Shown: in pieces, positions 45,221 to 47,909 of the stretch
How the letters are laid out: each line of letters opens with the position of its first letter
Position numbering within the stretch: position 1 is the stretch's first letter
Assembly: GCF_003704095.1 (NCBI RefSeq)
Contig: NW_020846293.1
Location: 1 to 64,000 of the forward strand
Direction of reading: 5' to 3'
Source: Pocillopora damicornis
Taxonomy: Eukaryota
DNA length: 64,000 nt
Notes under the pieces: model-generated
The model's input: the letters and a program-made list of their open reading frames with translations, nothing else
Database searches by the model: none
What the model was told of the DNA's origin: nothing
Position numbers and translations under genes: made by a program

Positions 45221-47909
45221 TTATTTTCTAGTCTTAGTTGATAGTGAAGCTTTCCTGGTGCTCATAATTTTCAAAATCTGGTTTGTCTCATTCATGATGT
45301 CATGTTTATGTAATACACTTTTCACTCCTTTGGAACTGACTCCTTCTGCTCTCACATACTCTCCAGCGAGGAGAGAAGCTGGTGGATAAAGCAAGATGTT
45401 AAAGAGTTTTTCCACTGTTGTGCCTGGTTTCAACGCAATACAGTCTCTGAGTATCTGGGGTTTCTCTTTTGTGATCACACTGATCGATTGACAAGTATCA
45501 AGGCAGTTAACTGGAAATGCATAAACTGGTGATCGGAGACTCACAGCTTGTGACAAAGCTTGCAGGACACCAGTGTCACCAAAGACATCAAGGACACTGG
45601 TTTTTACTTGTATCAACTCTTTCTTGGACTTTTCACTTAGATCCTGAGTTTGATGGTTAATTTCAAAATTTGATGCACCGCTTTGGTAGGTTAACACGCC
45701 ATCCTTGCATGCCTTTTGTAGAATACACTCACTCCTTGCACTAACAGGGACCATTGTCATGTCCACAAACTGCTCTTGAAATTTCTTCAAATTTTGAACA
45801 GCATCAGGAAAGTCAACTTTGTTAAGAGCTAAGAGAACTGGAAAGCGCAAGCGCAAGAATTTATCAACTAATTTGTGCACCAAAAGTTCAGCATTTGCTT
45901 TTTCTATTTTAGGAATAGTAAGGAGGTTTTTATCTGTGATTCCTGCTGACTCAAATGCTAAGTGAATCAATGCTTGAGATGCATGGTATCCAGTGAACAT
46001 GTCAAATAGTTTTGCTGGTTTCTTCACAATTGAGTCCCATTTGTCCATAATATTGTCATAAATCCAGCTGTGAAGTTCTTGCTGGATCCATCCCACATCT
46101 CTTGTAGGGTCATAATCTGATAACAAAAAAGAACAATCAAAAGCTCACCCTAAAAAGAAAAATATGACATGAATAGGCCACCCTGGAGAAGACAAGACCC
46201 TTTATACCCTAACACCAGTATGCCTTTTTCTCTGTAGTTATCTCAGATTTCTTAAGGTCCTGACAAGGAGAATTTGTTAAACAATCAAGAGCTTATTTAG
46301 GTGGTGATCATTTCCTGTATTCCTGTGACCTGAATGTGTGATTCTGGAGAGGTATTTTAAGGAGAAATTAGATGCTAGTCACTTCTGAGGGGGTAAAAAG
46401 GTTAATTATGCCTAAAAATGTTTTTAAGAAGAATTCCAATAAATCAAATTTTAATCTCCAGTACTTACCAGTGGTAGGTTTTCCATTCTCATCTGTCTGC
46501 CCTGACAGATCAATGACATGAATGAGTACATCAGCATCCAAGAGATCATTCAAAAATTTGTTTCCCCGTCCCCTTCCTTCACATGCACCTGGCACCAAAC
46601 CAGCCACATCTTTGAGCAAGACTGGAACAAACCTTTCACCTTGTGCACTGTGGCCATATCGAGCATGACATTGTTTATTCCACTGAACACAAGGGCAAGG
46701 TATTGCATAAAATGCCTGCCCAATATTTGGTTCAATTGTGGTGAAGGGATGCGCACCTATTTTTGCCATATTTTGGTGTGTAGCAGCATTGAAGAAAGTG
46801 GATTTTCCAGCTGAGGGTTTCCCTGAAAAATAAATTTAACTCCTCTCAATGAAAATTTAACAACTAAAATTTATTTCTATTAATATTTATCTCACAAGGC
46901 TTACAAATAACTCCAACCACAACCCCCAGGCATTTAGCTTGTATATATTTACTTATTTACAAATAAGTTCTCCTTAGCTTCTTATGATGTACACATTGTT
47001 CCTATTCATCATTCTCCTCATCATAACAAAGACAGATAAATAACTGAGAGTTAAAACTGTAGGAAAACACCAGGGACACACTAGAAATTGATTTAGTTTC
47101 ACATCTGACTGGTATGGACAATAGCACTAGTTTTGCAAACCAGTGAATGGTGCTTCAAATGTAGTATAGCACAACCAATGCAATCCAGGTTAATTTAGAA
47201 AAATACTCTAACAGTCCAGTAAGCTTGATAATGAACCAGCTGTTTATCAGAAAATCACTCCTTCACCACAGGAATTCTTCTCAGGGAGAAACAATGACCG
47301 CAATCGTGAGAACAACAGAAATCAAGCCTTAGTAGCTAAGACTGCTGAGTATTTATTTTATTAATATTTTAACTTTACCTAAATAATTATATATGATGTC
47401 TAATTATTACCAATTAGGCCAATGACGAAGTCCCATCTTCCACCTTTTGCACTGATCATTTCCAATTTGTCTTTGAAATTTTCTAAGTAAATAGAATCTT
47501 GACCATCTCTTTCCTCATCTGATTCAATTTCTGCTGCTTGGTCTCCTTGAAAGCTGTTGAATCTCATTGTATTTTCCTCAACCCATTCTTTTGCTGAATC
47601 TACTAAACCAAACACCATAGGCATTCCCACAGATTCCTCACACGAACATTTTAAGAAGGAGATCAGTTCTTCTATGAACTCTTTTGGCATTGCATTCGAG
47701 CGATTTGGGATCTCGATCAAAGGGATTTCTTCTGGATATTTCAGTGGAAGGGAAATCTTCAGTTGAAGCGACGTGACGGAAGAAGGGATGTTTAGCTCAT
47801 CAATTCTGATCATAAACGTCGGAGGGAAAGAACTGAGTTCGGAAAATTCATCAGGAAATATGGCTTTAAGGCTCTCGATCTCTTCTCTTTGCTCCTCTAA
47901 AAAATCCAT
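45221..47909 (-). CDS. RWD domain fused to an OBG-family (Ygr210/YchF-related) GTPase with a C-terminal TGS-like domain (3 exons)
   Basis: Exons 47411-47909, 46469-46822, 45221-46116 join in frame (G|GG, G|AT). RWD: EEQREEIESLKAIF...LPLKYPEEIP...GMPMVFGLVDSAKEW. GTPase: G1 GKPSAGKS, G2 PFTT, CPC...C insert, G3 DVAGLVPGA, GRGNKFLNDL, YDPTRDV, G4 NKVD, G5 SAR. Confidence 0.9.

What the first reader, a model, noticed from the sequence alone, without database searches (positions are those of the whole stretch)
45221..47909. RWD domain fused to a Ygr210-type OBG GTPase: candidate single-chain ribosome-stalling / GCN1-linked factor in an animal
Seen: the first exon encodes a full RWD domain, an acidic linker and the first residues of the GTPase (WDFVIGLIG). 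It splices in frame to KPSAGKST, so the fusion junction lies inside one exon and is not a gene-merging artefact. The GTPase has the features I recall for the Ygr210 subfamily (GKPSxGKS, PFTTIEPN, CxC...C...YG insert, DVAGLVPGA.EGRG.GNKFL.DL, G.TD..GK...YDP..D..W...E...WI) and a TGS-like tail. Established: Ygr210 is described mainly from archaea and fungi, and vertebrates use OLA1 and DRG1/2. RWD proteins (GCN2, IMPACT, RWDD1/DFRP2/Gir2) dock on GCN1, and DFRP2/Gir2 works as a heterodimer with the OBG-family GTPase DRG2/Rbg2 on stalled or collided ribosomes. Inference: this gene is a Rosetta-stone analogue of the Gir2-Rbg2 pair built from a different OBG clade. It could be an uncharacterised translational stress module retained in some non-vertebrate animals.
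Basis: partly seen in the sequence, partly recalled or inferred. Interest (0 to 1): 0.88.

Follow-up and report, generated by a model that had tools for sequence, protein, structure and literature searches.

The report
RWD-fused Ygr210 GTPase in coral
A real, expressed three-exon coral gene encodes an RWD docking domain fused to an archaeal-type (Ygr210) ribosome-family GTPase. It belongs to an old, widespread but unstudied eukaryotic gene family not found in vertebrates, and its RWD is closest to that of RWDD1/Gir2, so a link to stalled-ribosome sensing is a testable guess, not a result.

Summary
On the minus strand, three exons (47909-47411, 46822-46469, 46116-45221) give a 582-aa ORF: RWD, acidic linker, Ygr210-type OBG GTPase and a TGS-like tail. 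The first intron splits the codon of the first P-loop glycine, so RWD and GTPase share one exon. RNA contigs from four studies carry both splice joints. A relative's contiguous ORF (P0182) matches end to end without gaps at 87% identity.

The GTPase is Ygr210-type, not OLA1 or DRG (Pfam PF08438 8e-26; PDB 1wxq 1e-49 against YchF/OLA1 about 1e-13; structural Z 32 against 19).

The architecture is not new to databases. Lancelets, a tunicate, molluscs, annelids, nemerteans and cnidarians have it under automatic names. Protists, algae and chytrids carry a longer FSH1 hydrolase-RWD-GTPase form. None has been studied.

- The RWD-bearing proteins form their own clade, separate from yeast YGR210C-type proteins and from archaea (100/99 support). 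Chytrids keep both.
- The RWD is much closer to human RWDD1 (7e-17) than to any other solved RWD.

GCN1 and ribosome binding remain inference, about 0.35-0.4. The scan had not noted this elsewhere in this genome.

The parts
47411..47909 (-). Exon 1 (coding part). It encodes Met1 to Ile166 plus the first base of the Gly167 codon: RWD, acidic linker and the first G-domain strand. The mRNA 5' end lies at about 47944-47966.
   Evidence: RNA contigs reach 47944 (X1) and 47966 (X5).
47583..47897 (-). RWD domain (aa 5-109), with the YPxxxP motif at Y57-P62.
   Evidence: Pfam PF05773, E 2.6e-21. PDB 2ebm (human RWDD1), E 6.8e-17. On the P0182 model, structural Z is 15.1 to RWDD1 and 15.6 to the GCN2 RWD.
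47448..47573 (-). Acidic, low-confidence linker (aa about 113-154).
   Evidence: Sequence. In the model of orthologue P0182, pLDDT is below 50 at residues 131-136 and 48-64 for the blocks covering 121-140.
46823..47410 (-). Intron 1 (588 nt, GT..AG, phase 1). It splits the codon of the first P-loop glycine.
   Evidence: The joint is present in RNA contigs of X1, X5, X6 and X12.
46469..46822 (-). Exon 2 (aa 167-285). It holds G1 (GKPSAGKS), G2 (PFTTIEPN), the Cys-rich insert, G3 (DVAG) and the glycine-rich motif.
   Evidence: MMR_HSR1 E 2.5e-12. NF007171 E 6.1e-48 against YchF TIGR00092 E 1.9e-17.
46650..46697 (-). Cys cluster C209, C211, C218 plus H224 in the insert between G2 and G3. A zinc site is possible.
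   Evidence: Conservation by group: 14 of 16 animal proteins keep these residues. The short eukaryotic forms (24 of 24) and most archaeal forms have four Cys instead.
46554..46610 (-). G3 (DVAG) and the glycine-rich motif that follows Walker B (aa 238-256).
   Evidence: D238, A240, G241, G245, A246, G249, G251, G253 and N254 are invariant in 64 family members.
46117..46468 (-). Intron 2 (352 nt, GT..AG, phase 1). It carries an interspersed repeat of about 206 bp at 46221-46442.
   Evidence: The joint is present in four RNA runs. Repeat copies in the genome.
45221..46116 (-). Exon 3, coding part (aa 285-582 plus the TAA stop at 45221-45223). It encodes the helical insert, G4, G5 and the C-terminal domain. 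The 3' UTR continues below 45000.
   Evidence: An RNA contig is continuous from 45000 to 46116.
45506..45829 (-). YGR210-like_G4 domain (aa 381-488), with G4 NKVD at 45812-45823.
   Evidence: Pfam PF08438, E 8.2e-26. It is the only match in the 234-Mb genome. N383, K384 and D386 are invariant.
45245..45532 (-). C-terminal beta-rich, TGS-like domain (aa about 480-575).
   Evidence: The model superposes on 1wxq to residue 571 (Z 32.0, rmsd 3.1 over 332 residues), and on YchF/OLA1 and Rbg1 to residues 569-573. Pfam TGS gives no match at E<=1 for this protein, although two short-form relatives carry it.
47967..48082 (.). Short intergenic stretch (about 120 bp or less) shared with the divergent COX6A-like gene. 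A bidirectional promoter is likely.
   Evidence: RNA contig ends at 47966 and 48083. COX6A-like exons.

Best explanation
This is a genuine, single-copy, expressed coral gene for a 582-aa protein. The protein has an N-terminal RWD domain, a flexible acidic linker, a Ygr210-type OBG GTPase and a TGS-like C-terminal domain. The GTPase has intact G1-G4 motifs and NKxD, so it is predicted to be GTP-specific.

It is the coral member of an old eukaryotic clade of RWD-bearing Ygr210 GTPases. In most protists, algae and chytrids the form is FSH1 hydrolase-RWD-GTPase, and animals carry the shorter RWD-GTPase form. This clade is a paralogue of the short yeast YGR210C type.

Most likely mechanism (inferred, not shown). 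The GTPase and TGS part binds the ribosome in a nucleotide-dependent way, as its relatives YchF/OLA1, Obg and DRG do. The RWDD1-like RWD tethers it to an RWD receptor, most plausibly the RWD-binding region of GCN1 on stalled or collided ribosomes. One chain would then do what the DFRP2(RWDD1/Gir2)-DRG2(Rbg2) pair does as two chains.

My odds: gene and domain identity 0.97; ribosome-associated GTPase about 0.7; GCN1 docking about 0.35-0.4.
For: Shown:
- Gene model and frame.
- Both splice joints in RNA contigs of four studies, and one mismatch-free 2970-nt contig across all exons.
- An 87.5% identical, gapless 582-aa ORF in a relative.
- Single copy in the genome.
- RWD, MMR_HSR1 and YGR210-like_G4 above Pfam cut-offs. 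NF007171 scores 6e-48 and 1e-30, against 2e-17 for YchF.
- PDB by sequence: 1wxq 1.1e-49 against YchF/OLA1 about 1e-13. With the family profile, 1wxq reaches 7e-94.
- AlphaFold model of P0182: pLDDT 90, pTM 0.75. Structural match to 1wxq Z 32 against YchF Z 19.
- G motifs and the glycine-rich motif are invariant in 64 members.
- Trees: the RWD-bearing clade (animals plus FSH1 forms) is supported at 100/99, and is separate from the short eukaryotic clade (100/99) and archaea (100/100). The same three clusters appear at SH-aLRT 99 with a site-mixture model, 98 rows and a DRG outgroup.

Bearing on the mechanism:
- The RWD is closest to RWDD1. The single sequence gives 65 bits, against 23 bits or less for RNF25 and GCN2. 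The family profile ranks RWDD1 4e-22, GCN2 1e-15, RNF25 7e-12, RWDD3 5e-8 and IMPACT 1e-5.
- The Tyr aligned with position 74 of the yeast GCN2 RWD chain 2yz0 (taken here as native Y74) is kept as Y57. Y74A breaks Gcn1 binding (PMC8040806).
[quoted passage not shown] Gir2 links Rbg2 to Gcn1 on the leading stalled ribosome (PMC8040806).
- Yeast YGR210C seeds a protein-interaction module enriched for eIF2B and eIF2 (PMC2233647).
- YchF has been solved on the 50S subunit, and that structure (8kie) is the second-best structural match.
Against: - No ribosome or GCN1 interaction was tested here.
- YPxxxP is a hallmark of all RWD domains, including ones that bind other partners (RWDD3 with Ubc9, RNF25), so keeping it is not specific.
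- There is no DFRP_C domain. The protein is therefore not a DFRP, and whether a covalent link replaces the DFRP-TGS/G contact is unknown.
- The common ancestral-looking form carries an FSH1 serine hydrolase with a retained GFSxG elbow (17 of 27). The Gir2 analogy does not explain this.
- Another yeast data set places YGR210C with the small-subunit processome instead (PMC1940025).
- The yeast data concern the short paralogue, which has no RWD.
- No vertebrate, arthropod or nematode protein is among the best 120 matches. That suggests a dispensable or redundant role.
Confidence: 0.5

Rival explanations
1. Same protein, different RWD partner. The RWD recruits the GTPase to an E2-like, ubiquitin or SUMO-related partner, or to some other RWD-binding partner, not to GCN1. 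The GTPase then acts in a pathway unrelated to ribosome collisions.
For: RWD is a general protein-interaction fold. The family profile also matches RNF25 (7e-12) and RWDD3 (5e-8). The Ubc9-bound RWDD3 structure 4y1l superposes at Z 14.9. No GCN1 test was possible.
Against: The RWD is 40 bits closer to RWDD1 than to RNF25 or any other solved RWD. The two best families in the profile search, RWDD1 and GCN2, are both GCN1 binders (PMC8040806).
Confidence: 0.2
2. A ribosome-biogenesis or subunit-maturation GTPase, like Obg, Nog1, GTPBP5/10 and possibly yeast YGR210C. The RWD would be an adaptor to an assembly factor.
For: A consensus map of yeast complexes puts YGR210C with UTP/small-subunit processome proteins (PMC1940025). 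Many OBG relatives found by the fold search sit on pre-ribosomal particles.
Against: The yeast evidence is high-throughput, concerns the RWD-less paralogue, and conflicts with the eIF2B/eIF2 module. Biogenesis factors are usually essential and universally kept, whereas this gene was not found in several major animal groups.
Confidence: 0.15
3. The GTPase is primarily the regulatory or targeting module of an esterase. In the long form the FSH1/OVCA2-type serine hydrolase is the effector. The animal RWD-GTPase would be a remnant that works with a separate FSH1-family protein in trans or has lost that role.
For: FSH1-RWD-GTPase is the commonest form outside animals (Entosiphon, Ichthyophonus, chytrids, Tribonema, Plasmodiophora, dinoflagellates, Tetraselmis, Chlamydomonas). 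The GFSxG nucleophile elbow is kept in 17 of 27. The coral has an FSH1-type locus elsewhere, on contig C3714.
Against: Nothing links the coral FSH1 locus to this gene, and it is not adjacent. Animals have kept the RWD-GTPase under conservation without the hydrolase (41-51% identity across phyla).
Confidence: 0.1
4. Gene-model artefact. Two neighbouring genes (an RWD gene and a GTPase gene) have been merged, or the locus is a pseudogene.
For: None found.
Against: The RWD and the first G-domain strand share exon 1, and the intron splits a P-loop codon. Spliced RNA contigs come from four studies. Gapless full-length orthologous ORFs exist. Dozens of species have the same architecture.
Confidence: 0.01

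Closest known systems
Pyrococcus horikoshii PH0525 GTP-binding protein (PDB 1wxq) and archaeal PRK09602/NF007171 'YchF-related putative GTPase' (Ygr210 type)
   Same: The whole GTPase module matches: G domain with the Cys-containing insert, the helical insert, the YGR210-like G4 region and the C-terminal beta-rich domain. Sequence E 1.1e-49 (7e-94 with the family profile). Structural Z 32.0, rmsd 3.1 A over 332 of 344 residues.
   Different: The archaeal proteins have no RWD, and their matches start at residue about 160 of the coral-type protein. They form a separate clade (100/100). They have four Cys in the insert where animals have three Cys and a His. Their function is also unknown.
Saccharomyces cerevisiae YGR210C / S. 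pombe C428.15 ('45.2 kDa GTP-binding protein'), the short eukaryotic Ygr210 type
   Same: Same OBG subfamily and same Pfam domains (MMR_HSR1 plus YGR210-like_G4). NCBI names the animal genes after it.
   Different: It is a paralogue, not an orthologue. The short forms (about 420 aa, no RWD) are a separate clade (100/99). Chytrids such as Chytriomyces sp. MP71, Rhizoclosmatium, Physocladia and Obelidium carry both types. The coral has only the RWD type.
DFRP2-DRG2 (RWDD1-DRG2; yeast Gir2-Rbg2) heterodimer
   Same: An RWDD1-like RWD domain, an acidic flexible linker, and an OBG-family GTPase with a C-terminal TGS-type domain. In the known pair the RWD binds Gcn1 and the GTPase sits on the stalled ribosome (PMC8040806). 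The coral RWD is about 32-35% identical to the human RWDD1 RWD in structural alignments of the orthologue model, with sequence E 6.8e-17.
   Different: It is one chain instead of two. There is no DFRP_C domain. The GTPase comes from a different OBG branch, with no HTH or S5D2L domains, and DRG is a distant outgroup in the tree. The coral also has two DRG loci and a DFRP_C locus of its own. Binding to GCN1 or the ribosome was not tested.
YchF / OLA1
   Same: This is the sister branch of Ygr210 in the OBG family, with the same overall three-part layout. It is the second-best structural match (Z 17.5-19.4), which includes YchF bound to the 50S subunit.
   Different: No YchF-GTPase_C domain. TIGR00092 scores 63.5 bits against a cut-off of 279. 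G4 is NKVD, a GTP-type motif; from memory, YchF/OLA1 has an NxxE-type G4 and prefers ATP. The coral has a separate OLA1 locus.
Chlamydomonas Cre12.g538200 and other FSH1-RWD-Ygr210 proteins of protists, algae and chytrids
   Same: Same RWD-bearing clade (100/99), with the same RWD-linker-GTPase order. A paper notes the Chlamydomonas gene in passing as 'conserved in algae and invertebrates' (PMC12711092).
   Different: These carry an extra N-terminal FSH1/OVCA2-type serine hydrolase of about 200-290 aa, which animals lack. Their Cys cluster is degenerate. They are uncharacterised too.

Membership tests
Ygr210 subfamily of OBG GTPases | The YGR210-like G4-containing domain (Pfam PF08438) scores above the gathering threshold. 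| tested here: met
   E 8.2e-26, 91 bits against 24.7. It is the sole genomic match, at 45506-45829.
Ygr210 subfamily of OBG GTPases | A glycine-rich motif directly after Walker B/G3. This is the CDD/Leipe definition, recalled from memory. | tested here: met
   The motif DVAGLVPGAxxGxGxGN is present. D238, A240, G241, G245, A246, G249, G251, G253 and N254 are invariant in 64 members.
Ygr210 subfamily of OBG GTPases | Closer to archaeal Ygr210-type proteins than to YchF/OLA1, DRG or Obg. | tested here: met
   1wxq 1.1e-49 against YchF/OLA1 about 1e-13 and Obg about 1e-11. NF007171 6e-48 against TIGR00092 2e-17. Structural Z 32 against 19.
Ygr210 subfamily of OBG GTPases | A C-terminal TGS-type domain. 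| tested here: inconclusive
   There is no Pfam TGS match at E<=1. However, the modelled beta-rich domain at residues 480-575 superposes with the C-terminal domains of 1wxq, YchF/OLA1 and Rbg1. Two short-form relatives carry PF02824.
Orthologue group of yeast YGR210C | Falls in the same clade as fungal and amoebozoan short forms. | tested here: not met
   The short clade (100/99) excludes it. It groups with the RWD/FSH1 forms (100/99). Chytrids have both paralogues.
RWD domain proteins | An RWD fold with the YPxxxP motif. | tested here: met
   PF05773 E 2.6e-21. YPEEIP lies at residues 57-62. Structural Z is 15.1 (RWDD1) and 15.6 (GCN2 RWD) over 113-118 residues.
GCN1-binding RWD proteins (GCN2, IMPACT/Yih1, RWDD1/Gir2) | Physical binding of the RWD to the GCN1 RWD-binding region. 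| not testable with these tools
   Only indirect evidence: the nearest solved RWD is RWDD1, and the Tyr aligned with position 74 of the yeast GCN2 RWD chain is kept. No GCN1 segment with a usable reference was available for a complex prediction.
DFRP (DRG family regulatory proteins) | [quoted passage not shown] | tested here: not met
   No DFRP_C match in any exon. The genome has a DFRP_C locus elsewhere.
YchF/OLA1 | The YchF-GTPase_C domain and the TIGR00092 cut-off. | tested here: not met
   No PF06071 match. TIGR00092 scores 63.5 bits against 279.2. A separate OLA1 locus lies on C1053.
DRG1/2 | The MMR_HSR1_Xtn (S5D2L) insert and the DRG clade. | tested here: not met
   No PF16897 match. 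Coral DRG is a distant outgroup (branch 5.9) in the tree. Two DRG loci lie elsewhere.

The most novel reading that the evidence does not exclude
The RWD-bearing Ygr210 GTPases are an ancient, so far unrecognised arm of the GCN1-centred response to stalled or collided ribosomes. They would be a single-chain counterpart of DFRP2-DRG2 whose RWDD1-like RWD competes for or uses GCN1. In most eukaryotes this arm would also deliver an FSH1/OVCA2-type esterase to the ribosome, conceivably acting on an ester-linked substrate such as peptidyl- or aminoacyl-tRNA. Animals kept only the RWD-GTPase core, and vertebrates, arthropods and nematodes lost it altogether.
Probability: 0.25. Interest if true: 0.8.

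Novelty: new member of a known kind. Interest (0 to 1): 0.55.

Why it matters
Ygr210 is the one OBG subfamily with no assigned function. The library of 8.4 million papers mentions it in 18, and none studies it. Reviews still describe it by its yeast and archaeal members, and one comparative table lists it for yeast alone.

This locus and its relatives show three things:
- Eukaryotes have two Ygr210 lineages.
- One lineage is permanently fused to an RWDD1-like RWD domain, and usually to a serine hydrolase as well.
- That lineage survives in corals, molluscs, annelids, lancelets and tunicates.

The fusion gives a concrete, cheap hypothesis for an orphan GTPase: RWD points to GCN1, and the GTPase with its TGS-like tail points to the ribosome. 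Tractable species carry the gene, including Nematostella, oysters, ascidians and Chlamydomonas, where the lf5-2 deletion already removes Cre12.g538200 (PMC12711092).

If the hypothesis is wrong, the gene is simply one more conserved, uncharacterised GTPase.

Tried and rejected
- Joined protein. The joined 582-aa protein was not sent to any search, fold or look-up tool. Database searches were made exon by exon, by reference. P0182, a database protein that is 87.5% identical and gapless, stood in for the joined protein in the PDB search, alignment and fold. The joined translation was built only inside local scripts from window.fa. It served the frame check, a local BLAST against fetched proteins, and one row of the trees.
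- Merging artefact or pseudogene: rejected.
- OLA1 or DRG identity: rejected.
- YchF outgroup. TIGR00092 in three genomes reached through loci returned only their Ygr210-type genes, below the cut-off. The coral's intronless DRG served as outgroup instead. The order of the three Ygr210 clusters is therefore unresolved (the eukaryote-joining branch has SH-aLRT 60).
- Site-mixture 'careful' tree of 98 rows. It did not finish in three runs, so only its quick version is cited. A 59-row LG+G4 careful tree finished, but its bootstrap had not fully settled (correlation 0.989).
- Pfam TGS on exon 3: no match.
- Rfam on 45000-48300: nothing.
- Looking for the coral RWDD1 with the RWD as query found only an RWDD4-like ORF. 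A separate RWDD1 is therefore not shown, only a DFRP_C locus.
- Complex prediction with GCN1 was not run. The GCN1 RWD-binding region of this genome would have to be joined from many exons and has no reference. Swiss-Prot references are offered for bacteria, archaea and phages only.
- Yeast leads (the eIF2B/eIF2 module, the processome cluster, and the strong AUG uORF of YGR210C) concern the RWD-less paralogue. They conflict with each other and are treated as leads only.
- Earlier scan notes by words (RWD, Ygr210, OBG, GCN1) held nothing on this gene.
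Full report
**1. What is in the sequence**

The region 45221-47909 read on the minus strand gives three coding exons:
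- Exon 1: 47909-47411, 499 nt.
- Exon 2: 46822-46469, 354 nt.
- Exon 3: 46116-45221, 896 nt, including the TAA stop.

Joined in a local script they make 1749 nt, which is 582 codons plus a stop with no internal stop. Both introns begin GT and end AG.

Exon 1 encodes the RWD domain, an acidic linker and the first beta-strand of the G domain (WDFVIGLI). It ends after the first base of the Gly167 codon. Gly167 is the first glycine of the P-loop GKPSAGKS. The RWD-GTPase junction is therefore inside one exon, and intron 1 cuts the P-loop itself.

**2. Is it expressed as one mRNA**

The run index found the exonic share of the stretch (0.47-0.64 of words) in poly(A) RNA libraries labelled coral or marine metagenome, from several studies. 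I laid four runs from four studies on 45000-48300. All four have contigs with the joint 46116/46469 (skips 352 nt, CT..AC on the plus strand, which is GT..AG on the minus strand). All four also have the joint 46821/47410 (skips 588 nt; the cut is ambiguous by 2 nt, so it equals 46822/47411).

Run X1 holds one 2970-nt contig with no mismatch that covers 45000-46116, 46469-46821 and 47410-47944. A DNA contaminant could not produce these joints. The contigs end at 47944-47966, so there is no upstream exon.

**3. Independent check of the protein model**

A database protein, P0182, is a contiguous 582-aa ORF on a 2035-nt transcript contig of another organism. It aligns with the model over residues 1-582 without a gap at 87.5% identity. 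P0186 and P0187 (575 aa) are 66-68% identical.

Searches were made exon by exon, by reference. P0182 stood in wherever a full-length chain was needed.

**4. Domain identity**

Pfam:
- Exon 1: RWD, E 2.6e-21.
- Exon 2: MMR_HSR1, E 2.5e-12.
- Exon 3: YGR210-like_G4, E 8.2e-26.

NCBIfam: the archaeal 'YchF-related putative GTPase' NF007171 scores 6.1e-48 (exon 2) and 1.3e-30 (exon 3). YchF proper (TIGR00092) scores 1.9e-17, far below its cut-off.

Against solved structures by sequence, P0182 hits P. horikoshii PH0525 (1wxq) at 1.1e-49. YchF and OLA1 score about 1e-13 to 1e-14, and Obg about 1e-11. A 64-member family profile raises 1wxq to 7.4e-94, covering the chain from residue 3 to 394.

An AlphaFold model of P0182 built with that alignment is confident (pLDDT 90, pTM 0.75), and only the linker is poorly defined. 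It superposes on 1wxq at Z 32.0 (rmsd 3.1 A, 332 of 344 residues, model residues 161-571). YchF/OLA1 come next at Z 17.5-19.4 and Rbg1 at Z 15.4, all reaching model residues 569-573.

Motifs:
- G1 (GKPSxGKS), G2 (PFTT), G3 (DxAG) and G4 (NKxD) are invariant in the family.
- The glycine-rich run after G3 is invariant too.
- NKxD predicts GTP rather than ATP use.

The C-terminal domain is TGS-like by structure. It does not reach Pfam TGS by sequence.

**5. The RWD is RWDD1-like**

Exon 1 against all PDB chains gives human RWDD1 (2ebm) at 6.8e-17 (65 bits). The next are RNF25 at 8e-4 and GCN2 at 2e-3. The family profile ranks RWDD1 4e-22, GCN2 about 1e-15, RNF25 7e-12, RWDD3 5e-8 and IMPACT 1e-5.

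Structurally the RWD matches RWDD1 (Z 15.1, rmsd 2.2, 32% identity) and the GCN2 RWD (Z 15.6). The tyrosine of YPxxxP (Y57) aligns with position 74 of the yeast GCN2 RWD chain 2yz0, which I take to be native Y74. The Y74A change abolishes Gcn1 binding (PMC8040806). That motif is common to all RWDs, however, so this is weak evidence.

**6. Relatives and distribution**

Exon 3 scored against 1.84 billion representatives finds only 623 proteins at E<=1e-3. Many are 750-1000 aa long with the match at their C-terminus. Fifty of the best 150 also match exon 1.

Pfam on examples gives two architectures:
- RWD + MMR_HSR1 + YGR210_G4, 557-563 aa (for example the ascidian Phallusia mammillata).
- FSH1 + RWD + MMR_HSR1 + YGR210_G4, 787-981 aa (Entosiphon, Ichthyophonus and others).

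A search with the ascidian protein lists named relatives.
- RWD-GTPase form: four Branchiostoma taxa (three species and a hybrid), many bivalves and gastropods, Lineus and Capitella. Partial models come from Saccoglossus, Glandiceps, Nematostella, Desmophyllum and Acropora.
- FSH1 form: chytrids, Tribonema, Plasmodiophora, dinoflagellates, Tetraselmis and Diplonema.

No vertebrate, arthropod or nematode appears among the best 120, although protist matches down to 1e-69 are listed. [quoted passage not shown] So the architecture is in the databases under automatic names, but nobody has studied it.

**7. Two eukaryotic lineages**

A search with a short fungal protein (Basidiobolus, 432 aa) returns hundreds of RWD-less proteins of about 420 aa from fungi, Amoebozoa and others. 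These include chytrids that also own a long form: Chytriomyces sp. MP71, Rhizoclosmatium, Physocladia and Obelidium.

Archaeal genomes give 549 confirmed loci. All match from residue about 160 onward, so they have no RWD.

Trees of the GTPase part agree.
- With 98 rows, a site-mixture model and the coral DRG as outgroup, there are three clusters, each at SH-aLRT 99: short eukaryotic, archaeal and RWD-bearing. Inside the RWD-bearing cluster, animals score 95 and FSH1 forms 98.
- A finished careful tree of 59 rows gives archaea 100/100, short 100/99, FSH1 forms 100/99, the animals-plus-FSH1 split 100/99, and animals 93/81.

The order of the three clusters is unresolved. The coral gene is thus a paralogue of yeast YGR210C, not its orthologue, despite the NCBI name. 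The coral genome holds this one Ygr210-type gene only. It also holds separate OLA1, two DRG loci, a DFRP_C locus and an FSH1 locus.

**8. How it probably works**

Shown: the gene, its mRNA, the domains, the intact GTPase motifs, the clade, and the RWDD1-like RWD.

Established elsewhere (PMC8040806):
- The RWD of Gir2 is necessary and sufficient to bind Gcn1.
- Gir2 bridges Rbg2 to Gcn1 on the leading stalled ribosome.
- Rbg2's TGS and G domains contact the 40S and 60S subunits.
In addition, YchF binds the 50S subunit (PDB 8kie, seen).

Inferred: the coral protein binds ribosomes through its GTPase and TGS-like part, and is tethered by its RWD, most plausibly to GCN1. It would be a one-chain analogue of DFRP2-DRG2 built on another OBG branch.

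Against this:
- There is no DFRP domain.
- RWDs have other partners.
- The widespread FSH1 hydrolase, with GFSxG kept in 17 of 27, is not explained by the analogy.
- The yeast high-throughput data on the short paralogue point both to eIF2B/eIF2 (PMC2233647) and to the small-subunit processome (PMC1940025).

My odds are 0.7 for ribosome association and 0.35-0.4 for GCN1 docking.

**9. Verdict**

The gene is a new member of a known, annotated but uncharacterised kind.

It is still a useful lead. It gives an orphan OBG subfamily a concrete, testable hypothesis. It also shows that the usual account of Ygr210 by its archaeal and fungal members is outdated.

The organism is a stony coral, judging from the run labels and the nearest named relatives. 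From memory only, the assembly size and contig count (234.35 Mb, 4393 contigs) resemble a published Pocillopora assembly.

Noticed in passing
window 46221-46442 (inside intron 2): An interspersed repeat of about 206 bp. The genome gives at least 1154 first-look candidates, and the scored copies are 78-83% identical. RNA contig depth there exceeds 10^4 in all four runs, because many other transcripts carry copies. There is no Rfam match.
   Followed up: partly
window 48083-48201 and about 49727-49870, plus strand: The divergent neighbour is a COX6A-like gene. Its exon 1 (ORF from 48084) is spliced to an exon that starts MKTWKLIS and continues with [17 protein letters not shown]. The loose end of the RNA contigs at 48201 reads into that exon. 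The two mRNA 5' ends lie about 120 bp or less apart, so a shared bidirectional promoter is likely.
   Followed up: partly
window 46650-46697 (aa 209-224): A Cys cluster sits in the insert between G2 and G3. Animals have CxC-x6-C plus a conserved His (14 of 16). Short eukaryotic forms (24 of 24) and most archaea have four Cys. The FSH1-long forms are degenerate here. A zinc knuckle is possible; the metal was not tested.
   Followed up: partly
window below 45000 (3' of the gene): The X1 RNA contig continues 965 nt beyond 45000.
   Followed up: no
proteins P0203/P0293, P0034/P0299, P0038/P0329, P0022/P0297: Chytrid fungi carry both a long FSH1-RWD-Ygr210 protein and a short YGR210C-type protein. 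The long form was therefore lost within fungi, not absent from them. This also bears on the old idea (recalled from memory) that fungi obtained Ygr210 from archaea by transfer.
   Followed up: partly
long-form proteins (e.g. P0003, P0014, P0203): The FSH1/OVCA2-type hydrolase domain of the long forms keeps a GFSxG nucleophile elbow in 17 of 27 proteins. The others are N-terminally short or variant. The hydrolase is probably active.
   Followed up: partly
G000:C2213:62910-63224 (L085): One of the two coral DRG loci is an uninterrupted 369-aa open frame, that is, an intronless DRG gene. The other, on C464, is split into exons.
   Followed up: no
G000:C4219:88193-88510 (L093 1414-1830, minus strand): An intronless 138-aa ORF holds an RWD domain 30% identical to this gene's RWD. 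From memory, it looks RWDD4-like.
   Followed up: no
L061 (record titled Bacteroidaceae bacterium): A contig filed under a bacterial name carries an archaeal-type Ygr210 gene, and the genome shows no YchF above the cut-off. The bin is probably mislabelled or contaminated.
   Followed up: no
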